A stretch of 49,555 nucleotides of DNA, taken from contig NW_021834406.1 of the NCBI RefSeq assembly GCF_006345805.1, positions 1 through 49,555 of the forward strand, read 5' to 3'. The stretch is from Octopus sinensis (lineage: Eukaryota). Both the position numbers and the translations under genes were made by a program. Shown here in pieces: positions 190 through 49,425 of this stretch. Positions within the stretch are counted from its first letter, which is position 1. Each line of letters opens with the position of its first letter. Under the pieces are notes generated by a model. It did not search any database and was not told where the DNA came from. It saw nothing but the letters and a program-made list of their open reading frames with translations.

Positions 190-428
190 TACCTATTTCA
201 TTACTACCCACACGGGGCTAAACACAGAGGAGACAAACAAGGACAGACGAACGGATTAAGCCGATTACATCGACTCAAGTGCGTAACTGGTACTTAATTT
301 ATCGACCCTGAAAGGATGACAAGCAAAGTCGACCTCGGCGGTATTCGAACTCAAAACGTAACGGCAAACGAAATACGGCGTTACGCATTTCGCCCGGCGT
401 GCTAACGTTTCAGCCAGCTCACCGCCTT
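190..428 (-). mobile_element. SINE family C, full length
   Basis: Head AAGGCGGTGAGCTGGC..CGTTAGCACGCCGGGCGAAATGC, body GCCGAGGTCGACTTTGC..CATCCTTTCAGGGTCGATAAATTAAGTACCAG, tail TTAGCCCCGTGTGGGTAGTAATGAAATA; matches 17598-17820 and 26740-27340. Confidence 0.9.
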
Positions 429-1966: not shown

Positions 1967-2580
1967 AAGACGGCAGGCTGGCTGTTACGTTAGCACGCCG
2001 GGCGAAATGCGTAGCCGTATTTCGTCTGCCGCTACGTTCTGAGTTCAAATTCTGCCGACTTTGCCATTCATCCTTTCGGGGTCGATTAAATAAGTACCAG
2101 TTACGCACTGGAGTCGATATAATCGACTTAATCCGTTTGTCTGTCCTTGTTTGTCCTCTCTGTGTTTAGCCTCTTGTGGGTTGTAAAGAAATAGGTATTT
2201 CGTCTGACGTTACGTTCTGAGTTCAAATTCCGCCGAGGTCGACTTTGCCTTTCATCGTTTCGGGCTCGATAAACTAAGTACCAGTTACGCACTGGGGTTG
2301 ATGTAATTGACTTAATCCGTATGTCTGACCTTGTTTGTCTCCTCTAGGTTTAGCTCCTTGTGGACAATAAAGAAATAAGCATCGTTAGCACGCCGGGCAA
2401 AATGCTTAGCAGCATTTCTTCCGACATTACGTTCTGAGTTCAAATTCCGCCGTCGACTTTGCCTTTCATCCTTTCGGGGTCAATAAATTTAATGCCAGTT
2501 AATCACTGGGGTCGGCGCAATCGACTAGTTCCTTCCCACAAAATTTCAGGCCTCCTGCTTTTAGTAGAAAAGATTATTAC
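1967..2580 (+). mobile_element. Nested/tandem SINE C + C + C' cluster
   Basis: Unit 1 1967-2193, unit 2 2194-2377 (starts at internal GGTATTTCGTC), unit 3 2378-2580 (starts AGCATCGTTAGC, ends with the C' tail). Confidence 0.85.
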
Positions 2581-2902: not shown

Positions 2903-3125
2903 TTAAGGCAACTAGCTGGAAGAATCGTTAGCATACCGGACAGAAATGCTTAGCAGTATTTCATTCGTCTTTATAATCTCAGTTCAAATTCAAATTCCGC
3001 CGAGATCAAGTTTATCTTGCATCATTTTGGGATCAATAAAATAAGTACCAGACAAATACTGGGGTTGATGAAATCGAATAGCCCCCACCCCACAAATTTC
3101 ACGCCTTGTATGTATAGCAGAACAG
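2903..3125 (+). mobile_element. SINE C', diverged
   Basis: AAGGCAACTAGCTGGAAGAATCGTTAGCA head, TTCAAATTCCGCCGAG body, CCCCACAAATTTCACGCCTTGT tail. Confidence 0.7.
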
Positions 3126-3820
3126 GTTAATCGTAAACCTAATTACTTATTTCAGAGTGCAACAAATATACCTACTCTATCCTGTTCTAGATAGAAAACC
3201 TTTGTCATTCTCCATTAAGACGTAGCTAAAGCTGTTTCCAAAAATCTATATCTTCTATTTTGAATCAATTCCTTCAATTAATTTAGAACTCTTTCCTTCA
3301 CTTTACTTAATTATATAAAGTGTGAAAAAAAATCACATTAAAGCAGGGATATTATGAAACATTGTAACACTAATTTCTCTTTTTTTTTCAAACTGTCCAT
3401 ACCTGATCGTAAACTTTCACCAAAATGTGTGTGTATTATTTGGTGATATCTTACAAAAGCTGATCTTACTACAGTCAATACTTCATTAATTAAAATGGAT
3501 ACTTGTTTATCCATACATTTCCTTGGACCAGTAATAAGTCTATTTTTATAAGGCTTCTTAAGCAATTAAAGAATTCAGAATAATCTAGGAATATTTTTAT
3601 TCTCTTCCTCAACTATTAACATTTGTACGACTTTATCTTTCGTGCTACTAACCTATCTACTACCTCATTAATATTCATTGGCACCTGTATCTACGTGTTG
3701 TAACCTTCACCGTTATAGTTACAGCCAATAAGATAACATTGAACTTTTAATTATGACGATGATATTGCCTGTAGCCTTATCTGCCATCATCACAACATAT
3801 CTACCATGCTTGTCTCTCAG

Positions 3821-4123: not shown

Positions 4124-5320
4124 TTTACGTAGTTTTAATATATTTTTTAATATATTTTATAAGTGAAAGAGTATTCTGTTTGTCGACCGGTTTTACTTCT
4201 GCTAATCATGACATTGAAATTATTGAAATTGTGTATTTTCCTAAGAAGATTTTAGTCTATGCTCTGTATGGGAGTTTGGGAATGAATCAAGAAGTAGAAA
4301 AATATAAAACTGGAAAAGATATCTGGATGATTGGTTTATCATTTGGAATGAAACTATTGATAAACTGTTGGTATTTAAATGAATACGAAATAATATAAAC
4401 ATTAATATTCCATTTACAATGGGATATAGCAAAGAACAGCTCCCTTTCTGAGATATTGTGATAAGAAAAGTCAACAACTAAATTGTAACTGATATTTATC
4501 ATAAACCAACAGACTGAAAGCAATGACTTCTGTTTAGCTCATGACTCCAGAAACAGATAAAAAGTTACATTCCCTTTAATTTAGCGAACAGAATTTGCAC
4601 AATAGTCTGACGGAAATATCCGGGATCTCCGTTTTCAAGACATCAGAAGAACATTAACTGAGAGCCAATATTCAACCTCACAGTTATAAACGATAGAATT
4701 AAGCGTGCCAAGAAATTAGGCATTAAAACACTAAAGGAAACACAACTTAACGCCACGCAACATCTCAAAACGCTACCGTATATATCAACTCACAACCCTA
4801 GAGACAATGAGGCATACAACACTATTGCGGAAAATCTACCTACGCTCACTAGGGATCTAAAAATGAAAAACATTCTGAAAACACATAAATTTATCAAATT
4901 CAAAAAGCAACTCATATGGCTGAAAAGACGTCTTACAAATGCGAAGCTTTACACAACAACCACGAAACCAATGGTTAAAACATGTGGACGCCCAAACTGT
5001 GGAATACGCCCCAACTTACTGGACGGCTCTGATTTCCTATTGAATCAAGGAGAGAGGTTTAGAATTAAAACCAACTTCACTTGTGCTTCCGAGAATCTAA
5101 ATTATATCATAACTTGTTTAGGTTTTTGGATATAACTATATGGGACAGACATTGTATAGCACTTAGATTTTTATTTGTTGATTCATTCAAAAACTCCCAT
5201 ACACAAAATGGTCTAAAATGGTCTTAAGAAAGTACGAATTTCAATGTCATGATTAGCGAAAGCAAAACCGGTCGACAAACACATTAAAAAATACATCAAA
5301 ACTATATAAAACTGCGTGCC
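4124..5320 (+). mobile_element. Penelope-like element (PLE), 5'-truncated, with inverted copy of its 3' region at the 5' end
   Basis: Degenerate RT (RYLDDWFIIW at 4317, EQLPFL, TDIYHKPTD, FNLANRICTIV), then a CGRPNCG linker and the GIY-YIG N-half (FTCASENLNYIITC..YMGQT, ending ~5150). 4124-4300 is the reverse complement of ~5165-5310. Confidence 0.85.
4317..5150 (+). pseudogene. PLE RT / GIY-YIG endonuclease remnant (stops and frameshifts)
   Basis: Motifs as above; ORF track 4863-5135 covers the linker and endonuclease start. Confidence 0.8.
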
Positions 5321-5339
5321 TAGTTTTAAATACCTAGGT

Positions 5340-5662
5340 GATAGTTATATAATAAAAAAAAATTAATAATAAATAAATAAATAAATAAATATAAATATTA
5401 AAAAATTAAAAGTTTAAAAATTAAAAAATTATAAATTTAAAGTTTATAAAATATATAAAAAAATATATATATAAAAATATAAATATATATATAAAAATTT
5501 ATAAATATAAATCAAAAATTTTAAATTTAAATAATTTAATTTTAAATTTTATATTTTATATATTTTGTATATTATATTAATTATATTTATTTTTATGTTT
5601 TGGTTTATGTTTTTTAACTGTTTGAGTTGCCTAATAGTGGTTTTATCGTTAATATAATTTAT
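5340..5662 (+). repeat. AT-rich interspersed repeat (probable PLE 3' tail family)
   Basis: Aligns directly with 15357-15628 (shared GTTGCCTAATAGTGGTTTTATC) and in reverse with 34412-34552. Confidence 0.75.
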
Positions 5663-17156: not shown

Positions 17157-17597
17157 TATGTAATTTTTTTTCATAGACTTTCGTTTATTATTTCCATATC
17201 CAGACATCTGGAGCCACGGATCTTATTTCTGTGAGTAGTTTTATCTTTTTTTATTCATTAGATACATTTGTAATGATTTCATGCTATTAATGTTGCTATT
17301 ACTAGTGGCTTTCATGGTGTCGGTAGTGGTGTTGATGGTGACGCCGATGGTGGTGGTGGTGGTGACGGTGAGGATTCTAACATAATTATTCTTGGTGGTG
17401 AAGGCTTTCCTGATATATCTGTTTGCGCCTGATGATATCTGGTAAAAGAGCTGGTGGTAATTCTGTTATTGCTCTTGGTGGTAATGGTGGTGATGATGTT
17501 GATGGTAATGGTGATGGCCGTGGTGGTGATGGAGGTGATGGCGATATATTCGTTTCGCCTGATGATGGTGGTTAGCTGGTGGTAGTGCTACTGGTGA

Positions 17598-17820
17598 GCT
17601 GGCAGAAACGTTACCACGTCAGGCGAAATGCTTAGCGGCATTTCGTCTGCCGTTACGTTGTGAGTTCAAATTCCGCCGAGGTCGACTTTGCCTTTCATCC
17701 TTTCGGGATCGATAAATTAAGTACCAGTTACGCACTGGGGTCGATGTAATCGATTTAATACCTATGTCTGTCCTTGTTTGTCCCCTCTATGTTTAGCCCC
17801 TTGTGGGTAATAAAGAAATA
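17598..17820 (+). mobile_element. SINE family C with 17-bp target-site duplication
   Basis: GGTAGTGCTACTGGTGA at 17581-17597 and 17821-17837. Confidence 0.92.
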
Positions 17821-17964
17821 GGTAGTGCTACTGGTGAAACTGTTATTGCTCTTGATGGTGGTGGTGGTGGTGGTGATGATGTCGTCATTTTTGTGCTTGG
17901 TGTTGTTACTGGTGATGTTCTATTTTATGCATATGAGAATGTTCATGCTGGTGCTGCTGTTGAT

Positions 17965-18620: not shown

Positions 18621-19119
18621 ACACTGCTGATGATGTTACTGACTTTTGTATAGTGGCAAGTCAGTGATCATCGTAATTGATGCTGGTGGGAGTAATCCAC
18701 TGATGGTGATAGGTATGGGGGAGTGACCATTAATACTCATGATGGTGATCGTTGGTTGCGATTTTAATTGAAATAGTGCTAATAGTGGCAACGGGCATGG
18801 ATGTGGAGGGGACTGACTGTATGTAGTGTTTGTAGCAACTGTGTTTATAATAATTGTGACTGTGGAGATAGTGGCTGATATCAATGTGACAGTAGTAGCT
18901 GTTGCTGGGATGGTGGTGGTCGTAATGGTTGGGGTAAAAGTTGTGGTGGTCGGAGTGCTGGCGACTTGTAATGATATAAACAGCAGCATCAGCTTCAGCT
19001 GTAGTAGTGATGATTGCGGCTTTGGTTTTTATTCAGACCCTAAATGTGACTCAATTTTGGTTCATGTGGTTGGGAAACAAAATTCCTACCAGACAGCTAC
19101 GACTGTGCCTGTATATATA

Positions 19120-19331
19120 CAGTGGTTAGGTTGTCAGCATTATGATCGTAAGATTGTGGTTTCGATTCCTGGACCGGGCGATGCATTGTGTTCTTGAGCA
19201 AAACAGTTCATTTCACGTTGCTCCAGTTTCACTCAGCTGGCAAAAATGAGTAAAGCGCGATGGACTGGCGTCCAGTCCAGCTGGGAACACATGCACCATA
19301 AGAATAGCCCCTTGTGGGCAGTAAAGAAATA
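19120..19331 (+). mobile_element. CORE-type SINE ending in the family C/Tx1 tail
   Basis: tRNA-like head, CORE-like TTCTTGAGCAAAACAGTTCATTTCACG, GCGATGGACTGGCGTCC, then AGCCCCTTGTGGGCAGTAAAGAAATA. Confidence 0.7.
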
Positions 19332-20138: not shown

Positions 20139-21390
20139 TTCTTTATAAATGTTCTGAAATCTTTCTCAACCTTGGATTTTTATCTCAATCTGTTAACTTA
20201 TATATATATATATACATACACTTAGAATTGTATATACACTCCAACAATATATCTAGTGAAAAGAACGTTGAACGTTGCTTATATGTGTCTAAAAGCATTT
20301 CTGCGTGTTTTATGGAACATTTCTGAGACGTCAAAATTTCAACTTTCGTTGAAGGCTGCATAGGAGCATAGGTTCTTTACGTACCCCTCCGGTGTTGTTA
20401 GGCAATATATAATGATCAAATTATGCCGTAGATATAATGTACAAATTTATGGTCTAATGTCTATGTAAATGAGCAGTGGACCTGTAGGATCATAAGAACA
20501 TTAATTGATAGAACTTTTTCTGCTTGGAGTTACATCTGCCTTGCATTTTTGCGGGTTATATACAATTCCATGAAAGTATTGGTGACAATTTAAACGACTA
20601 ACCACCGACCTACAGATTTCTCGTTTTGTTAAAAAACAGTTCTTATTCTTGTAATTCATGGGTGGTGAACTGGCTTATACTTTGGTGCGACGAACAAAAT
20701 ACCTTGTGGGTCTTGTTTCGGCTCATTACACTCTCTGTTCAAACTTTTCAGCCCAGCGTCAGATTTTGTTTTGCATCTTTCCAGGGTTGATTAAGTAGAG
20801 TACCAGCCAAGTTAGGATATCGGAAAAAATACTGCGGTATTTCTTGTAGCATTTTAAGAACTATGCTGAGTTCAACTTTATCTTTCATCACTTCGGGACT
20901 GATATACTAAAGTTCCAGTCAAATAATCCCTACTACAATTAGGCATAAGGCTTGAAATTAGGCAGAAGACCTGAAATTTGGTACTTATTTTCATCGACCC
21001 CGAAAGGATGAAAGGCAAAGTCGACCCGACGAAATTATAGCCAAATACTGCGATCCAAAGAATTTATTTTTCTCAAACATTCAAAACTTAGAGTAAAAAA
21101 TCAGAAGTCATTGTTAATTCATAAATTAATTAAATAACTTATTTGTTATTGTTATTATAGTTGCTGTAGTTATTAAAGCAATAAGCTGGCAGAATCGTAG
21201 CGCATCGGAAGAATCCATAGCGTTATTTCGAGTCTTTATATTCTGTGTTCAAATGCAGCCGAGGTCAAATTCGCTTTTCATGTTTCAGGACTTAAAAAAT
21301 TAAATTTCAGTCAATTAGTGGGGTCGGTGAAATTGAATTCTCTCTTCCATCACAAACTGCTGGCTGAATATTATTATTATTATTATTGCT

Positions 21391-21790
21391 AAGGCGGCGA
21401 GCAGGCAGAATCGTTCGCACGTTATTTCGACTGCTTAGCGTTATTTCGACTATCGCTACGCTCTGAGGTTAAATTCCGCCGAGGTCGACTTTGCCTTTCA
21501 TCCTGTCGGGGTCGATTAAATAAGTAGCGGTTGCGCACTGGGGTCGATATAACCGACTTAATTCCTTTGTCTGTCCTTGTTTGTCCCCTCTGTGTTTAGC
21601 CCCTTATGGGCAATAAAGAAATAAGAATCGTTAGCAGACTGGGCAAAATGCTTAGCGGTATTCCTTTCGTTTTCACGTTTTGATTTCAAATTCCGACGCA
21701 GTCGATTTTACCTTTCATTCTTTTGGGGTCGATAATAATCGACTTACCCGCTCCACCGAACTTGCTGGCCTTGTACCAAAATTTGAAATC
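21391..21790 (+). mobile_element. SINE C (21391-21623) followed by C' (21624-21790)
   Basis: Junction AAAGAAATA|AGAATCGTTAGC, the same as at 2377/2378; a further diverged C' copy lies at ~21180-21370. Confidence 0.85.
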
Positions 21791-26739: not shown

Positions 26740-27340
26740 TATTTCTTTATTGCCCACAAGGGGCTAAACATAGACGGGACAAACAAGGACAGACAAACGG
26801 ATTAAGTCGATTATATCGACCCCAGTGCCTAACTGGTACTTATTTAATCGACCCCAAAAGGATGAAAGGCAAAGTCGACTTCGGCGAAATTTGAACTCAG
26901 AACGTAACCGCAGACGAAATACCTGTTTCTTTATTACTCACAAGGGGCTAAATATAGAGGGGACAAACAAGGACAGACAAACGGATTAAATCGATTATAT
27001 CGACCCCAGTGCGTAACTGGTACTTAATTTATCGACCTCGAAAGGATGAAAGGCAAAGTCGACTTCGGTGGAATTTGAACTCAGAACGTAACCGCTGACG
27101 AAATACCTGTTTCTTTATTACCCACCAGGGGCTAAATATAGAGGGGACAAACAAGGACAGACAAACGGATTAAATCGATTATATCGACCCCAGTGCGTAA
27201 CTGGTACTTAATTTATCGACCTCGAAAGGATGAAAGGCAAAGTCGATTTCGGCGGAATTTGAACTCAGAACGTAACGGCAGACGAAATACTGCTAAGCAC
27301 TTCGCCCGGCGTGCTAACGTTTTTGCCAACTTGCCGCCTT
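26740..27340 (-). mobile_element. SINE family C trimer (three 184-bp units, one head)
   Basis: Units 26740-26923, 26924-27107 and 27108-27291, plus head to 27340. Confidence 0.92.
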
Positions 27341-38639: not shown

Positions 38640-38743
38640 AGCGCTGCTTCTGAATGGTCAATCCATAGTGATGACCCGAGGTCACGGTGACAGCGCTGCT
38701 TCTGATTGGTCAATCCATGGTGATGACCTGAGGTCACGGTGAC
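38640..38743 (+). repeat. 52-bp tandem duplication
   Basis: AGCGCTGCTTCTGA(A/T)TGGTCAATCCAT(A/G)GTGATGACC(C/T)GAGGTCACGGTGAC twice. Confidence 0.95.
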
Positions 38744-43179: not shown

Positions 43180-43348
43180 ATTTACATAAACCCCAGTACA
43201 GGGCTGGTACTTACTTTATCAACTACGAAAAGATGAAAGGCCAAGTCGAACTTAACGGGATTGAATTCAGAACTTTCAGACAGATAACAATGCTCTCAAG
43301 TATTTTCTTTGACGGCGTGCTAACGATTCTGCCAGTTCGCCGCCTTAA
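43180..43348 (-). mobile_element. SINE family C, diverged, tail missing
   Basis: GCGTGCTAACGATTCTGCCAGTTCGCCGCCTT head and GATGAAAGGCCAAGTCGA body. Confidence 0.75.
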
Positions 43349-43539: not shown

Positions 43540-43671
43540 CATGAATAATAATAATATAATAATAATATCACTAATAATAAAATATGATGAGAGATGATGA
43601 TGATGATATGATAATGATGATAATATAATGATAATGAATAATGATACATAATAATAATAATTATATATAAA

Positions 43672-43704
<33 letters not shown>

Positions 43705-43810
43705 TAATAAAATAATAAATAATGAAATAATAATAATAATAATATAATAATAAAATAATGATAATAATGATAATAATAATAATAATATAATAATAATAAT
43801 AATAATAATC
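43540..43810. repeat. Degenerate (AAT)/(GAT) microsatellite abutting the Tx1 3' end
   Basis: Direct inspection. Confidence 0.9.
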
Positions 43811-44089
43811 AATTCTTTTTTATTGGCCACAAGGGCTGACACGCATGATTACATAAAGGGACAAGACAGGACGAAAGGTTACAAAGGGTTTTGCCGTTTT
43901 TAAAAACATCGAGTAAAAATCTTTATAACAACTTATAAATTCAAACAATGAAAAACTCCCAAAAGGGGGAGACGTCTCGAAAGGTTCCTGGTGGAAAAAA
44001 CCCTACAAAAGCCAACGGGAGCCTGGTCAAAAAAAGGGGGTGTAGAGAGTCCCCTTTCTTCTCCTTTTACATTACCTTTTTCTTTGAAA

Positions 44090-47000
44090 TCACAGGCGAA
44101 ACCTGAGAACTGGTCCATTTATACAGGCCAGTCTCGCACAATTCACCCACCTTTCATAAAACTTGCTATCGGACAGCACTTTCCTCTCTAACCTCATCTT
44201 CCTTTTCAAGTGAAACTTGAAAAAGTTGATGAGGCCTTGACCAAAGAGGAAAGTGTCTGTCTTTAGCCCTTTCAAACGAGTCCACCACACACCTCTTTCG
44301 CCACAGCCACTAGGCACAAGAAACGGCCTCGCCCTCCTTGTTAAAGGAGGTCGGCGGGGCAATCTTCACTATGGATTCGGCCGATAGTCGGATCCGTCCT
44401 ACACGTGACAGTAGCTGTTCGACATAAACCCATATTTCAGCAATACTCGGGCACTGAACGAGTGCGTGCAGAACGGTTTCGTCGTCCTGGCAACACCTCG
44501 GGCAGGCCCGGCTGACGGCACTTCCGTGCCGGTAGAGTTTATCTCGAACAGGCAGAGCCCCTCGGTAGCACTGCCAGGCGAGAGACCTCTGGAAATTATC
44601 CATCGGCCCCGGCCCGAAAGTCCTCCCGAACAGACCGCTCAGTTCGTCGTCTTCAACGCCTAGAGTTTCCCCGAGAACGTCGTCGCATTTTTCCTCCACT
44701 AACCCTCTATAGAACGCTAGAGGGAGCTGTAACCGACCGCATTGCCCGCCTGGCGGAGGGCGGAGAGGGCTTGACGGCACTCGAGGTGCCAAGCGCCCTT
44801 TCTCGGTCTACGTTTGATCCAGGTCTGCAGCTCCGTCAAAGAGACGAGCTGCGGAAAATCGCGTCTGACAAAAGACGACCACACCTGTTCACCGTCTAGG
44901 AAGCGCTTGAGATGCCGCAGCCTGAGCGCATGTCTGCGCAACAGCAACCACGGCATTCCAAGGCCTCCGTTCAGCGGTCGTTGACAGCAGATGGATCGCC
45001 TGACCAGTGGCACCTGACCCTTCCACAAAAAGTCGAAGAGCAGGCGTACCAGCTTGGCCAACCAGCGGTCGGGACAAGGGACGACGGTCAAGCGGTAATA
45101 GATGACGGATGCGATGTACGCATTCGCCACCTCCGCTCGACCTTTCAGGGACAGCTTCCTCTCGGCCCATTTCTGGGTGAGACGTGCCACCCTGCTCGTC
45201 ACCTCTTCCCAGTTCTTATCCACCTGGAGGTCCGGACCGAACCAGACCCCGAGCAGTTTAACGGGTCCGTCTGTCCAGCGCCCTACGACGCTGTTGGACG
45301 GCATGGGCTTGCCTCTCCAGGTGCCCAGTTGCAAGCCCACAGACTTTTCCGCGTTAATCTTTGCCCCTGTCACCGCTTCGTACTGGTTTAGCGTCTCGCC
45401 AATCAGGCCAATGTGCCTGTGGCTCGACACCACCACGGTGACGTCGTCGGCATAAGCAGACACGCTGTTTCCGCCTCCTAGATCGCGCGGGATACCCCTC
45501 AAAGCCTCCAACTTGCGCAGTAATGGCTCGAGAGTCAAAATGTACAAGAGGGAGGAGAGAGGGCATCCTTGGCGGACCGAACGCGAGATGTCGAACGGTT
45601 CCGAAAGGTGACCGTTCACCCGTATCACCGAGCAGATGTTGCTGTATAAAGCAGCGATCCACCCGCGGAAGACTGGACCGAAGCCGGCTGCCCTGAGGAC
45701 AGCTGCCAGGTACCGATGGTCGACCCTATCGAAGGCTTTACTCTGATCCAAGTTGATCAAAGCCCCACCCGCGCCAGCGTCGTTACCCACCTCTCTATGA
45801 TGTAGCGCATGAGATGGAGGTTGTCGTGTATCGACCTGGTCGGCACGGCGCATGTCTGCGTCTCGCCGACCAGCTTGTCCACGACAAGCGCCAATCTCTT
45901 GGCTAGCACCTTGGCCAAAATCTTCAACTCTGCATTGAGCAGAGTGATGGGCCGGAAATTCCCTATAACGTCCCCCTTGTTTGGGTCCTTCTTTAGCAAA
46001 GCCACCACCCCTCGACAGACAAAAGCAGGAATTCTCCCGTTTTGCTGCCAGTTGCAGTAGACGTTTGCCAACAGGTCCGCAAACAAGTCTGGCATTGAAA
46101 AGTAAAGCTCGTAGGGCAGACCATCCAACCCGGCGATCTACCTCTCGTGCAACTCTTCATCGCTTCCTGTACTTCCCAGGCAGATATCGGTCCTTCGCAG
46201 CACTCTGCCTCGCTGTCCGAGAGTTGCGGCAGTCCGTCCAGGTACACACCGAAGTCTGTACCGTTGGTGTCCGTTCCACCGCTCGTCCCAAACAGTTGAG
46301 CAAAGTGCCGCTGAAGCACCGTACACATCTGCTTCGGTTGGGTAACCTCGCGCCCGTTCTGGTCCACCAAAGACCGAATGGTTGCTCTGTTGCCTCGCTT
46401 CGCCTCCGCCACGCGGGCCCATCGAGCGGCTCTAGTCCCCTCCCCGCTTAGCGAACGTGCCTTAGCTCTGACAACGCAGCCTTCGTGTTTGGCGTCGAAG
46501 TGTTGGTCGAGGGCCAACCTTGCCGCCAACACGTCGGTCGCGATGCCAGTGTCAAGAGCCTCGTCTAGTTTCTTAACTAAATCCCGCTCTCTCTTCCTAC
46601 GTTCAATAGCTAGAGTCTTACTATACCTAATCGACTCTACTCTAATTGCTCTCTTGAGGGCAAACCACCAGTTGTTGTTGATGATTGCCCCCGTGAGCGC
46701 CCGCTTAACTAGTAAACTAATCCGGTCTCTGTAAGCTTTGCACGCCGTTAACGACGCGTTCAGCTTCCAGTAGCCGGGTCCCTGTCTATGTAGCCTATCT
46801 AAGTCGACCGTACAGATCACTAATTTGTGGTCCGTATATTCGACTAGGTGGAATTGTGGACACCCTACGCTGTCCTTATCCGCTGGCCTACAAAACACTC
46901 TATCTAAGTACGATCTAGACGACCCGATGCGGTTTGTCCAAGTCCACATTGGCACATTCGGGTTGTCTAGTCGAAACCTGTCGGACAGCTGAAAGCGGCC

Positions 47001-47518
47001 GAGTAGGTTGGCGAGGCTCTTGCACCCCCCCCTCTCCTATCAGACGCTCCCCTGCCCACCCGATCGAAACGTTCGTCTAAGACAGCGTTCCAATCCCCAA
47101 CTAGTACTAGAGTGCGTGACGTTCCCAGGAAAACTTCCAGACGTTTGAAATAATCCGACTGCCCTGCTCCTGTCGGAGCGTAGGCAGCCAGCAGTCTGAA
47201 AGCACCGCCGTCACTACCGTCGACGTCGAGGACCACCAACTTACCTTCCGGATCCAAGAAGACTGTCCTTATTTTCAGGTCCAGGCCCTTCCGAAACAAC
47301 ACCGCAGTACCACCACCGCCCGCTCCCGGCCGACACGGAGATAGAAATATCTCGTATCCGCCGAAAAGGGCTGCGAGTTCCTGCGGGTCGGAGAGCCTGG
47401 TTTCACTGATGGCTGCTACATCCACATCATGAAACCTCAGGTCGTTTAACAGGTGACCCTGTTTCCAAGGTGACCCGAGGCCTCTCACATTCAAGCAACC
47501 GATTCTAAGATTTGCCAT
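44090..47518 (-). CDS. LINE ORF2 (APE endonuclease, reverse transcriptase, C-terminal CCHC), split by ~6 single-base frameshifts
   Basis: NVRGL, ISETR, YAP, GDWN, SYLDRVF, DH; RPITLLN, LDQSKAFDRV, RQGCPLS, YADD (45443-45454); CPRC..ETVLHALVQC. Segments match ORF track 46967-47518, 45993-46955, 45757-46128, 44717-45853, 44310-44792 and 44090-44362. Confidence 0.9.
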
Positions 47519-47556: not shown

Positions 47557-48372
47557 CTACTTACTGTTGTTGGTGTGGGGGTGGCTCCCTTGTGCTTTTG
47601 CACGGGTGCTTCAATAATATTTTTGTAAAGTTTCTGAGAGAAACTTTTCCCTAACGATCCCACATCGTTAGGGAATATTTGTTTTATTTCGTTGTAAACT
47701 GTTTTGTTTATTTTTATTGTGAGAATGTGTGCTGGTGGTGTGTTGTGTGTAGGTATTATGAATCTGTAATGTTTGTGCTTGTTTTGTTTTTCAAATACTC
47801 AACCAGTTCCTGGTTTCTTGTATTCACTGCTGTAATCGTGTCTGTAATTGTGTCTGTGTTTTTTGTGTCTGTGGTAGTGGCAGTAGTGGTGTCGAAAGTG
47901 TTGTTGTTGTTGTTTGTTGTTGTGAGTGTGTGTTGTTGTTGATGTTGTTGTTGATGTTGGGAAGTACTATTTGTTCGTGCTTCCCCTGTAAATCTTTTGT
48001 TTTTTCCTCCTTTTCTTTTTTGGAGGCACTATGTTCCATTCTCCTTTGTTGGAATCAGAGCTCGCACAATCCGAGATCTCTTCATCCGGCAAAGGAATGG
48101 TTGAGGGGTCTGCTTCAGTAGCAGGACGAAAAGTTTTTGGTTCCGCCGGTATCGGTGTGCCGCTGCTCCTGTTACTGTTGATGTCGCTGCTGTCGACCTT
48201 CGAGGTACTGGTGTCGGTGTTGGTTTGGTGTGGTTTTCGGTGTTGGTTTGGTGGTGGTTGTTGTTGTTGGAGGTGGTGTTGTTCGTCTTGGTGCTGGTGT
48301 TGGTGATGGTGTTGGTGGTGTGGCAGCCTTTGGTGTTTCTTGCTGTTTTTGTTGTTTCTGTTGTTGTTGCTG

Positions 48373-48403
<31 letters not shown>

Positions 48404-49425
48404 GCTGCTGCCTCTTGCTGAAAGCCTCCATCCTCTTTTTGTGAATGGGACAGTCCCTCTTTAAGTGGCTTTCGCTGCTGCAGAGAAAACATTTTGGCTT
48501 TCGCCCCTCCACAGCAACGTTTAGCCTGGTGCCGTCCGGCAAACTTACGAAATCAGGGACTTTACTTATATTCTCTTGCTGAATTTGCGCAAGAAGCAGC
48601 ACTCCCATCCCCAACCAGTTTTTCGCCCTCACTCTCCTGACATCTAGAATGGTGGTAGTGTCCTCTATATCATAGAGGACAGCTGCCACCAGCCATGACA
48701 TATCTAGCTCAGGGGGGGGGAGGTCGATTTTTATTTTTGTTACTCTTCGCCCGAGGTGGGTCGGAACTAGTAACAAATTCTCAGTTTGCAAGGGCGAAAT
48801 GGCGTTCGCCCTTGCAAGCTCCTCTGTTGGGAAGCGAACCTCCACGGTTCCAAAACGCTTCCCCTTGGTTACGTAGCTCTTTTGGGCCCAAATGGGCTTT
48901 AGAGCTATCTCCAACTGTTGGGGGTGGCATTTTATTTTTTTTAGTTTTCTGTCGAAAACTTTGTAATTATTATGTTTTCTTGTTGGTGCTTTCAATCACC
49001 TCTTGTGGAGTATTGAGGAAGATGCCATTGCCATCCTTCCTCAACAACTCCTTCGCTCTTTTCACATCTTCTAGAGTTATCTTAACTTCCTCCGAAATTT
49101 GCTTCGCAGCAGAAGCAAAATTGTTGGAAGTTTTTTCTTTATCTCCGTGTCAATGTTTGTGATGATTTTTGTATTTGTTTTTTTTTCCTCCTCCTTCCGT
49201 ACCAAAGCATTGGGTGAAGGCAGAGGGGGAAAATCGAGAATTACGTCGAACGCGACGTCCTGGCTTGCATTCTCCTTTTGAACCGAGCGCGTGCTCTCCG
49301 GTTCGGAAGGAGGACTTTGTGTTGCCTTTTAAGGCGTGAAGTGGGTGTTTTGGACGAGTTGTGTGTGTTTGCGGAGGGAATGTATCTTGAAGGAAGGAAC
49401 AGCCAACTGTTCGCTTCATAGCCAT
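47557..49425 (-). CDS. LINE ORF1 (gag-like nucleic-acid-binding protein), frameshifted; boundaries approximate
   Basis: CFLCSSESHLKRDC zinc knuckle at 48450-48491 inside ORF 47967-48995, an upstream ATG at 49425, and a low-complexity Q/N/T-rich C-terminal part. Confidence 0.7.

What the first reader, a model, noticed from the sequence alone, without database searches (positions are those of the whole stretch)
43811..43875. Tx1-clade LINE and SINE family C share a 3' tail with a CUUGU stem-loop: a candidate LINE/SINE partnership
Seen: the LINE sense 3' end reads GTCCTGTCTTGTCCCTTTATGT..GTGTCAGCCCTTGTGGCCAATAAAAAAG, and family C ends GTCCTTGTTTGTCCCCTCTGTGTTTAGCCCCTTGTGGGCAATAAAGAAATA (e.g. 26740-26790 minus, 17770-17820, 21580-21623). 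About 50 nt are shared in two blocks. Both fold into a GC stem closing the same CUUGU loop (GCC/GGC in the LINE, GCCC/GGGC in the SINE). Known: tail-sharing 'stringent' partnerships with 3' stem-loops are typical of L2, CR1 and RTE elements, while mammalian L1 uses poly(A). Inference: this Tx1 ORF2p recognises a structured 3' element and mobilises the very abundant family C. I cannot tell whether this pairing is already catalogued.
Basis: partly seen in the sequence, partly recalled or inferred. Interest (0 to 1): 0.8.

Follow-up and report, generated by a model that had tools for sequence, protein, structure and literature searches.

The report
Octopus LINE and SINEs share tail
A long retrotransposon of the L1/Tx1 type in an octopus-like genome ends in a short conserved RNA hairpin that several abundant short retrotransposons (SINEs) also carry, so this element family is probably what copies those SINEs; the mechanism is a known kind, seen here in a LINE group where it is rarely reported.

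Summary
The dead LINE copy on the minus strand ends at 43810-43875 with GCC-CTTGT-GGC, then AATAAA. SINE family C ends with the same module (GCCC-CTTGT-GGGC-AATAAAGAAATA).

The tail is native to the LINE. Four further LINE copies keep the loop, the stem and an AATAAA signal (a metagenome contig, two Argonauta hians copies, one Octopus sinensis copy), at 46-83% protein identity. A fifth copy (L004) keeps only CTTGTGGCCAAT.

The SINE C tail matches the O. sinensis LINE tail best (44/47 nt). It matches the window's own diverged copy less well. The partnership therefore holds at the family level, not for this copy.

A second window SINE with an unrelated body (19118-19331) and about 20 Argonauta SINE copies carry the same tail. 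SINEs have 7-17 bp target-site duplications and end exactly after the module.

The hairpin is only 3-4 bp and is no more stable than shuffled sequence. Its CUUGU loop is invariant, and two stem pairs change on both sides together, including in a cuttlefish sister lineage.

The LINE has an L1-type architecture. The Tx1 label rests on elimination, not on a phylogeny.

I found no paper describing this pair. Repbase and Dfam could not be checked. It is a new member of a known kind.

The parts
43810..44089 (-). 3' UTR of the LINE copy. It is collinear over about 280 nt with the 3' UTR of an independent LINE copy (L002).
   Evidence: Alignment A3. The ORF2 stop lies near 44090.
43826..43836 (-). Terminal hairpin of the LINE tail: GCC-CUUGU-GGC, a 3 bp stem with a 5-nt loop.
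   Evidence: The stem is counted across lineages.
43819..43824 (-). AATAAA directly 3' of the hairpin. It is also kept in the SINE tails.
43560..43809 (-). Degenerate (ATT)n run directly after the LINE end. This is the LINE's 3' terminal repeat.
   Evidence: Four of five LINE copies are followed by (ATT)n: L002 with at least 30 units, Argonauta with 4 and about 19 units.
44090..47518 (-). LINE ORF2, broken by several frameshifts and stops. Pieces: AP endonuclease 46967-47518, RT 44717-46128, zf-RVT/C-terminus 44090-44792.
   Evidence: Pfam PF03372, PF00078, PF13966; closest solved structure is human L1 ORF2p.
47967..48995 (-). LINE ORF1, with a single CCHC zinc knuckle (CFLCSSESHLKRDC) and a Gln/His-rich low-complexity stretch. 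The 5' end of the element is not defined and may lie beyond 49555.
17598..17820 (+). SINE family C copy, flanked by a perfect 17-bp target-site duplication GGTAGTGCTACTGGTGA (17581-17597 and 17821-17837). Tail hairpin at 17796-17808.
190..423 (-). SINE family C copy with a 16-bp target-site duplication (1 mismatch).
1977..2377 (+). SINE family C head-to-tail dimer. The second unit starts at SINE position about 48. A further 5' fragment lies at 2383-2524.
21391..21623 (+). SINE family C copy. Another 5'-truncated SINE follows it directly.
26740..27335 (-). SINE family C head-to-tail trimer (184-nt period). Each unit ends with the tail module.
19118..19331 (+). Second SINE family ('E') with an unrelated body but the same tail, TAGCCCCTTGTGGGCAGTAAAGAAATA. 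It sits in a (TA)n tract.

Best explanation
The window comes from an octopod genome. On the minus strand it holds a dead, near full-length non-LTR retrotransposon with L1-superfamily architecture: ORF1 with one CCHC knuckle, and ORF2 with AP endonuclease, reverse transcriptase and a CCHC/zf-RVT domain. It is most probably the group annotated L1-Tx1 in octopus genomes.

The last 40-55 nt of its 3' UTR form a conserved module. A U-rich block (UCUAUGUUU) comes first, then a short GC hairpin closed by an invariant CUUGU loop, then AAUAAA-GAAAU, usually followed by (AUU)n.

Several SINE families have acquired this module as their 3' tail: family C and a second family in the window, and the SINE copies in Argonauta.

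Inferred mechanism, by analogy with stringent LINE/SINE pairs such as UnaL2/UnaSINE1:
1. ORF2p of active members of this LINE family binds the terminal module of its own RNA.
2. It starts target-primed reverse transcription just 3' of the module.
3. SINE transcripts carrying the same module are copied in trans.
4. This gives insertions that end exactly at GAAAU(A) and are flanked by 7-17 bp duplications.

Shown: the homology, the tail being native to the LINE, its spread across SINE families and species, the target-site duplications, and coordinated changes in the stem. Inferred: binding by ORF2p, and which LINE subfamily was the donor.
For: Tail native to the LINE:
- L002 (80% aa identity) ends ...GGGCCCTTGTGGCCAATAAAAGAAATC(ATT)n, and its UTR is collinear with the window's.
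- A full-length Argonauta hians LINE ends GTCCCCTCTATGTTTTTGCCCTTGTGGCTAATAAAAGAAATA(ATT)4. A truncated Argonauta copy ends ...GGACCCTTGTGGTCAATAAAAGAATT(ATT)~19.
- An O. sinensis copy ends ...GGGCCCTTGTGGCTAATAAAGAAAT.

SINE-to-LINE similarity:
- blastn of the SINE C tail hits the O. sinensis and Argonauta LINE termini (E=1.3e-7 and 6.6e-5).
- Smith-Waterman z scores are 5.7-16.2.

Spread of the tail: a second window SINE family carries it. About 20 tail-bearing SINE-like copies lie in 20.8 kb of Argonauta.

Target-site duplications: 17, 16, 17, 13, 10 and about 7 bp for SINEs, and 5-7 bp for one LINE copy.

Stem:
- Octopod set: 95.5% of cells paired, against 7-50% when the partner is slid. 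Pair 3 is GC:7, CG:2, AU:1.
- With the cuttlefish/L005 sister lineage (GGC-CUUGU-GCC): 85.4% paired against 66.2% in shuffles (0/500). Covariation is 0.473 against 0.165 (0/500). Pair 2 is CG:9, GC:3.

LINE type: Pfam PF03372 + PF00078 + PF13966. Human L1 ORF2p is the best solved relative, at 1.5e-21, against 2e-12 for R2.
Against: - The hairpin is only 3-4 bp. Fold energies of the tails are not better than shuffles (z from -2.3 to +1.2).
- L004 (65% aa identity) keeps CTTGTGGCCAAT but not the 5' arm or AATAAA. The primary sequence may matter more than the stem.
- Pair 4 is unpaired in 6 of the 12 rows of the full alignment.
- LINE copies carry (ATT)n, but SINE C copies end at GAAATA with no repeat. 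In classic stringent pairs both partners share the terminal repeat.
- Only one LINE target-site duplication could be defined, so target-site signatures cannot really be compared.
- The window's own LINE copy is inactive and has the least similar tail.
- The covariation counts rest on 11-12 sequences, picked by hand as lineage representatives. They amount to about three independent events.
Confidence: 0.7

Rival explanations
1. A SINE family C copy, or a fragment of one, simply inserted at or recombined onto the end of this one LINE copy. The sharing would then be a local accident.
For: The window is dense with SINE C copies and nested or tandem insertions.
Against: The whole 280-nt 3' UTR, tail included, is collinear with an independent LINE copy. 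Four other LINE copies from at least two other species end in the same module, directly downstream of homologous ORF2 C-termini. No SINE body sequence precedes the tail in any LINE copy.
Confidence: 0.02
2. The module is conserved for a reason other than template recognition by the reverse transcriptase. One candidate is a polyadenylation or 3'-end processing signal: AAUAAA with an upstream element. SINEs would carry it as a passenger, or for RNA stability, while another LINE or a relaxed mechanism mobilises them.
For: AATAAA is part of the conserved block in the window, L002, Argonauta and O. sinensis LINE tails and in the SINE tails. In the cuttlefish/L005 lineage the hairpin and AATAAA lie 25-60 nt apart. 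The hairpin is weak.
Against: SINE copies end precisely 5-6 nt after AATAAA and are followed at once by the target-site duplication. No poly(A) is present. The module therefore sits exactly where reverse transcription must begin. Unrelated SINE bodies have independently kept or acquired the same 40-nt tail, which is the pattern seen for LINE-recruiting tails.
Confidence: 0.15
3. The LINE is not an L1/Tx1-group element. It would belong to a clade where tail sharing is routine, such as CR1/L2-like or I/Jockey-like. The pairing would then be real but entirely ordinary.
For: No RT phylogeny with reference clades could be run. The only LINE reverse transcriptases matched among solved structures were L1 and R2, so 'closest to L1' is a coarse test. 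A 3' (ATT)n-type repeat and a stringent-looking tail are more typical of non-L1 clades (PMC3747384).
Against: ORF2 carries the zf-RVT (PF13966) C-terminal domain above Pfam's threshold in both the window and the Argonauta copies. ORF1 has a single CCHC knuckle. ORF2-length relatives are about 1150-1300 aa with the RT starting near residue 580. Among LINE groups annotated in octopus (RTE, Dong-R4, CR1, L1-Tx1, Hero, R2; PMC13282606), only L1-Tx1 fits AP endonuclease + RT + CCHC with a large ORF1. That last step is my inference.
Confidence: 0.13

Closest known systems
Stringent-type LINE/SINE pairs with a shared 3' stem-loop, such as eel UnaL2/UnaSINE1 and zebrafish ZfL2 (L2 clade)
   Same: The SINE 3' end is homologous to the LINE 3' UTR end. 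There is a short hairpin with a conserved loop at the very 3' end. The LINE ends in a short tandem repeat. Several SINE families share one LINE tail (PMC3747384, PMC4176376).
   Different: The LINE here has L1-superfamily architecture, not L2. The hairpin is shorter (3-4 bp, plus a possible AU-rich extension). SINE family C lacks the LINE's (ATT)n repeat. No assay exists for this pair.
Maize/sorghum LINE1-1_ZM with ZmSINE2/ZmSINE3, and Chlamydomonas L1-1_CR with SINEX-3_CR (L1-clade tail sharing; Ohshima 2012/2013)
   Same: These are L1-group LINEs whose last about 45-80 nt are shared with tRNA-type SINEs. In maize there is a hairpin with compensatory changes and a conserved loop (PMC3747384, PMC3472496).
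   Different: Those are plant and algal lineages, ending in poly(A) or T-runs. This case is an animal (cephalopod) lineage ending in (ATT)n. [quoted passage not shown] None was an animal element and none was Tx1.
Crocodilian Tx1-Mar LINEs and SINEU (Kojima 2015, PMC4494074)
   Same: A Tx1-clade LINE is inferred to mobilise SINEs.
   Different: That inference rests on a shared target site (Mariner-N4_AMi) and shared snRNA-derived 5' heads. SINEU ends in poly(A) and shares no structured 3' tail. Here the link is the 3' tail, and no strict target specificity is seen.
[quoted passage not shown]
   Same: These are abundant octopus SINEs. SINE E, and the 3' body of SINE C, look CORE-like to me. That is from my memory of the MIR core and was not tested.
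   Different: I could not obtain the published consensus sequences, so identity with OK/OR1/OR2 is untested. No LINE partner is listed for them in the 2013 table of 58 pairs (PMC3747384).

Membership tests
LINE/SINE partnership by shared 3' tail (stringent type) | The SINE 3' end is homologous to the 3' end of a LINE in the same genome, beyond chance. | tested here: met
   (z 5.7-16.2; blastn E down to 1.3e-7).
LINE/SINE partnership by shared 3' tail (stringent type) | The tail belongs to the LINE itself, being present in independent copies and subfamilies. | tested here: met
   five further copies, four with the full module, at least two other species, 46-83% aa identity.
LINE/SINE partnership by shared 3' tail (stringent type) | The SINEs are retroposed units: defined ends and target-site duplications. 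| tested here: met
   target-site duplications of 7-17 bp. 3' ends are fixed at GAAAT(A).
LINE/SINE partnership by shared 3' tail (stringent type) | The SINE head carries a pol III promoter (derived from tRNA, 5S or 7SL). | tested here: inconclusive
   The Argonauta short SINE head matches the Rfam tRNA model over its full length, but below threshold (21.8 bits, E=0.03). Window SINE C and E heads give no tRNA hit. B-box-like GAGTTCAAATTCC / GGTTTCGATTCC is visible by eye.
LINE/SINE partnership by shared 3' tail (stringent type) | A conserved terminal stem-loop supported by compensatory change. | tested here: met
   loop invariant, pairs 2 and 3 change on both sides. The helix is only 3-4 bp, is not energetically distinctive, and is absent in L004.
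LINE/SINE partnership by shared 3' tail (stringent type) | The LINE protein mobilises the SINE or tail-bearing RNA in trans. | not testable with these tools
   This needs a retrotransposition assay.
L1 superfamily / Tx1 clade non-LTR retrotransposon | ORF2 with an N-terminal AP endonuclease, an RT and a C-terminal CCHC domain, plus a separate ORF1. | tested here: met
L1 superfamily / Tx1 clade non-LTR retrotransposon | The RT groups with Tx1 reference elements in a phylogeny (RTclass1). | not testable with these tools
   No reference sequences were available. The closest solved structure is human L1 ORF2p. An attempt to find named relatives failed. Mollusc surveys report Tx1 as the only L1-group clade (PMC10294476). 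In octopus, L1-Tx1 is the only L1-group annotation (PMC13282606).
L1 superfamily / Tx1 clade non-LTR retrotransposon | Target-sequence-specific insertion (typical of many, not all, Tx1 elements). | tested here: inconclusive
   The (ATT)n after LINE ends varies from 0-1 to about 80 units, and its far flank differs between copies. It therefore reads as a tail, not a target. Only one LINE target-site duplication was defined.

The most novel reading that the evidence does not exclude
An animal L1-group (Tx1) LINE lineage uses stringent, structure- or sequence-specific recognition of a CUUGU-loop hairpin at its 3' end. The element would be conserved from octopods to cuttlefish. This lineage, and not the RTE elements highlighted so far, would be the engine that amplified the SINE families making up roughly a tenth of octopus genomes.
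Probability: 0.35. Interest if true: 0.7.

Novelty: new member of a known kind. Interest (0 to 1): 0.5.

Why it matters
SINEs are the largest repeat class in Octopus genomes, about 11-12% of O. vulgaris (PMC13282606). They are described as an octopus-specific expansion (PMC8967140). I found no paper that names the LINE which mobilises them. In the latest annotation most recently active SINE families are 'unclassified'.

A tail shared with an L1/Tx1-type LINE gives a concrete and testable candidate. It would also add an animal example to the very few L1-group LINEs that share a specific 3' tail with SINEs. That bears on Ohshima's question of whether stringent recognition is ancestral in the L1 group.

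In practice, the 40-nt module can be used to classify octopod SINEs by partner.

Tried and rejected
1. Looking for more LINE copies in the JGI metagenome collection. A protein-profile scan found nothing. A 19-mer scan returned only bacterial chance matches in a FabD-like gene. The collection seems to hold no octopus DNA.
2. A viral-contig scan with the tail motif gave 8 hits that I took for chance matches and did not inspect.
3. Naming the LINE clade through named relatives. The exhaustive representative search gave 28,099 hits, with the best 150 unnamed. Two cluster look-ups of 20 ORF2-length relatives returned no useful names.
4. P0009 was not on record. L001, L003, L023 and L025 end before the LINE terminus or are interrupted.
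5. Rfam at gathering threshold found nothing in the window. ARAGORN found no tRNA.
6. SINEBase supplements, for the OK/OR1/OR2 consensus sequences, are not held. Albertin 2015 is not held. No paper contains the tail strings.
7. I considered (ATT)n as a microsatellite target, as for Kibi and Koshi. I rejected this because the repeat number ranges from 0-1 to about 80 and the sequence beyond it differs in each copy.
8. I considered an extended 11-bp hairpin (UCU.UGUU..GGCC-loop-GGCU.AAUA.AGA). It is the minimum-energy fold in 6 of 11 lineage tails. It shows no compensatory change, only sequence conservation, so I do not claim it.
9. No target-site duplication was found for the window LINE. Its 5' end is probably outside the window.

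Full report
WHAT IS THERE

The window is AT-rich, full of microsatellites and dense with SINEs. On the minus strand, from before 49100 down to 43810, lies a non-LTR retrotransposon.
- ORF1 (48995-47967) has one CCHC knuckle.
- ORF2 is split by several frameshifts and stops into three parts: an AP endonuclease (47518-46967, Pfam PF03372), a reverse transcriptase (46128-44717, PF00078) and a zf-RVT/CCHC C-terminus (44792-44090, PF13966).
- It is a dead copy.
- Its 280-nt 3' UTR ends ...GTCCTGTCTTGTCCCTTTATGTAATCATGCGTGTCAGCCCTTGTGGCCAATAAAAAAGAATTG. About 250 nt of degenerate (ATT)n follow.
- The hairpin GCC-CUUGU-GGC is at 43826-43836 and AATAAA at 43819-43824.

SINE family C is present as eight tail-bearing units (190-423 minus, 1977-2377, 17598-17820, 21391-21623, 26740-27335 minus) plus fragments. 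All eight units end ...GTCCCCTCTATGTTTAGCCCCTTGTGGG(C/T)AATAAAGAAATA, or a decayed form of it.
- The motif CCCTTGTGGSCAATAAA occurs 9 times with up to 3 mismatches, against 0.13 expected.
- Local alignment of the SINE C 3' end to the window LINE tail gives z=5.7 against dinucleotide shuffles (2 of 1000 reach it).

IS THE TAIL THE LINE'S OWN?

A protein search with the RT fragment and with a C-terminal profile led to independent copies whose DNA I could read.
- L002 is a metagenome contig at 80% aa identity. It has a 3' UTR collinear with the window's and ends ...GGGCCCTTGTGGCCAATAAAAGAAATC(ATT)n.
- Argonauta hians locus L021 holds a full-length LINE (ORF1, AP endonuclease, RT, zf-RVT). It ends GTCCCCTCTATGTTTTTGCCCTTGTGGCTAATAAAAGAAATA(ATT)4.
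- A second, 5'-truncated Argonauta copy ends ...GGACCCTTGTGGTCAATAAAAGAATT(ATT)~19.
- Octopus sinensis locus L022 holds a 5'-truncated copy ending ...GGGCCCTTGTGGCTAATAAAGAAAT. It has a 5-7 bp target-site duplication.
- L004 (65% aa identity) keeps CTTGTGGCCAAT but neither the 5' arm nor AATAAA.

The module is therefore ancestral to this LINE family in octopods. The SINE C tail is closest to the O. sinensis LINE tail (44 of 47 identical, z=16.2) and to the Argonauta tail (z=11.9). It is least like the window's own copy (blastn E=1.3e-7 and 6.6e-5). The partnership is with the family, not with this particular dead copy.

MORE SINES USE THE SAME TAIL

At 19118-19331 a SINE with a different body ends TAGCCCCTTGTGGGCAGTAAAGAAATA. 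A small profile of the tail finds about 20 SINE-like copies in 20.8 kb of Argonauta DNA (at E up to 0.001). Their consensus ending is ...CTTCTGTGTTCGGCCCTTGTGGCTAATAGAGAAATCTATTT. They include a short SINE whose head matches the tRNA model over its full length (21.8 bits, below threshold) and a SINE with a family-C-like body.

Other SINE families in the window share the family C head but carry different tails, for example 21175-21390 ending CTGCTGGCTGAATATT(ATT)n. This is the usual picture of tail swapping between LINE partners.

RETROPOSITION SIGNATURES

- SINE copies are flanked by duplications of 17, 16 (1 mismatch), 17 (1 mismatch), 13, 10 and about 7 bp.
- They end exactly at GAAAT(A), 5-6 nt after AATAAA, with no poly(A).
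- LINE copies are followed by (ATT)n in 4 of 5 cases, with 0-1, 4, about 19, at least 30 and about 80 units, and with different sequence beyond. I read this as a terminal repeat made during reverse transcription and not as a microsatellite target.
- SINE C lacks that repeat. This is a real difference from classic stringent pairs.

THE HAIRPIN

On 11 lineage-level tails from octopods, the 4-pair helix around CUUGU is paired in 95.5% of cells. When the partner is slid, 7-50% are paired. Pair 3 is G-C in most LINEs, C-G in SINE C and E, and A-U in the second Argonauta LINE copy. Pair 4 alternates between G-C and G-U.

A sister LINE lineage at 40-51% aa identity carries GGC-CUUGU-GCC near the end of its 3' UTR. 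It is found in the cuttlefish Acanthosepion pharaonis (L024) and in an unidentified ENA contig (L005). In L005 the motif occurs in two LINE copies and in a third context.

Adding these rows gives 85.4% paired against 66.2% in shuffles (0/500). Covariation is 0.473 against 0.165 (0/500). Pair 2 is C-G in 9 rows and G-C in 3. The loop is invariant in all 12 rows.

Against this:
- The helix is tiny.
- Fold energies are no better than shuffles.
- Pair 4 is unpaired in 6 of the 12 rows.
- L004 lacks the 5' arm.
- The counts reflect about three independent events in hand-picked sequences.

My reading is that a small hairpin presenting CUUGU, plus the flanking (C/U)AAUA(A/G)A, is the conserved element. 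I cannot separate the contribution of structure from that of sequence.

WHICH LINE CLADE?

- The architecture, a zf-RVT match above threshold in two species, and human L1 ORF2p as the best solved relative (1.5e-21 against 2e-12 for R2) place the element in the L1 superfamily.
- I could not run a phylogeny with reference clades, and the attempt to find named relatives failed.
- Published RT-based surveys find Tx1 as the only L1-group clade in molluscs (PMC10294476). They list L1-Tx1 among recently active octopus LINEs (PMC13282606).
- The Tx1 label is therefore likely, at about 0.85, but not shown.

COMPARISON WITH WHAT IS KNOWN

Tail sharing with a terminal stem-loop is the textbook mark of stringent LINE/SINE pairs (PMC3747384, PMC4176376).
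- In the L1 group it is rare. The 2013 table lists three SINEs, in maize, sorghum and Chlamydomonas, among more than 800 L1-clade LINEs. It lists no Tx1 pair and no mollusc pair.
- Tx1 elements have been proposed to mobilise SINEU in crocodilians. That proposal rests on shared targets and 5' heads, with poly(A) tails (PMC4494074).
- Bivalve SINE partners reported so far are CR1, CR1-Zenon, L2 and Nimb (PMC11481361).
- Octopus papers describe the SINE expansion and annotate most SINEs as tRNA-Core, tRNA-Deu or unclassified, without naming a partner (PMC8967140, PMC13282606, PMC9115989).
- I found no paper containing the tail sequence.
- Repbase and Dfam could not be searched, so prior cataloguing there remains possible.

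VERDICT

The mechanism (ORF2p recognising the CUUGU hairpin module) is a reasonable inference that needs an assay. This is a new member of a known kind. It is of moderate interest because of the LINE group involved and because it names a candidate driver of the octopus SINE expansion.

Noticed in passing
window 26740-27335 (-) and 1977-2377 (+): SINE family C forms head-to-tail arrays. One full-length unit is followed by units that all start at SINE position about 48, with the junction GAAA(C/T)A|GGTATTTCG. The same junction occurs at two separate loci. Possible causes are RT template jumping from a processed RNA 5' end, repeated insertion at an internal GGTA site, or a multimeric SINE subfamily. 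The Argonauta short SINEs are also head-to-tail (L021:4903-5362).
   Followed up: partly
window 21623/21624 and 2377/2378: A second recurrent SINE-into-SINE junction, GAAATA|AG(A/C)ATCGTTAGCA. A complete SINE C is followed directly by a SINE truncated at head position about 25. Two SINE C target-site duplications and the tandem junction all begin with GGTA, which hints at a nick-site preference.
   Followed up: partly
window 21175-21390 (+), 2905-3130 (+), 43182-43341 (-): Related SINE families share the family C head and body at about 71-73% identity but carry different 3' tails. One ends CTGCTGGCTGAATATT(ATT)n. These are presumably partners of other LINEs, a sign of tail swapping.
   Followed up: partly
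L021:4735-4900 and 4903-5362 (Argonauta hians): A nested pile-up: a C-like SINE, then a LINE 3' fragment with (ATT)~19, then three short tRNA-head SINEs in a row, then a full-length LINE. Elements of this system seem to insert next to each other's tails.
   Followed up: no
L005:8807-8830 (unidentified ENA contig): The sister-lineage hairpin motif CGGCCTTGTGCCAAA also occurs in a third sequence context that is not the LINE 3' UTR. This may be a SINE-like user of that lineage's tail.
   Followed up: no
window 48150-48420 (-): ORF1 of the LINE contains a long Gln/His/Asn/Thr-rich low-complexity stretch encoded by (CAA)n-like repeats. The Argonauta ORF1 has a comparable Thr/Pro-rich stretch.
   Followed up: no
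window 38640-38743: A 52-bp unit is repeated twice at 94% identity (AGCGCTGCTTCTGAATGGTCAATCC...). It is unrelated to the SINE/LINE system.
   Followed up: no
L001-L004, L023, L025: Contigs labelled as metagenome assemblies, and one protein (P0009) named as a Herbaspirillum MAG protein in NCBI, encode this cephalopod LINE. These are host DNA contamination in metagenome and MAG records.
   Followed up: no
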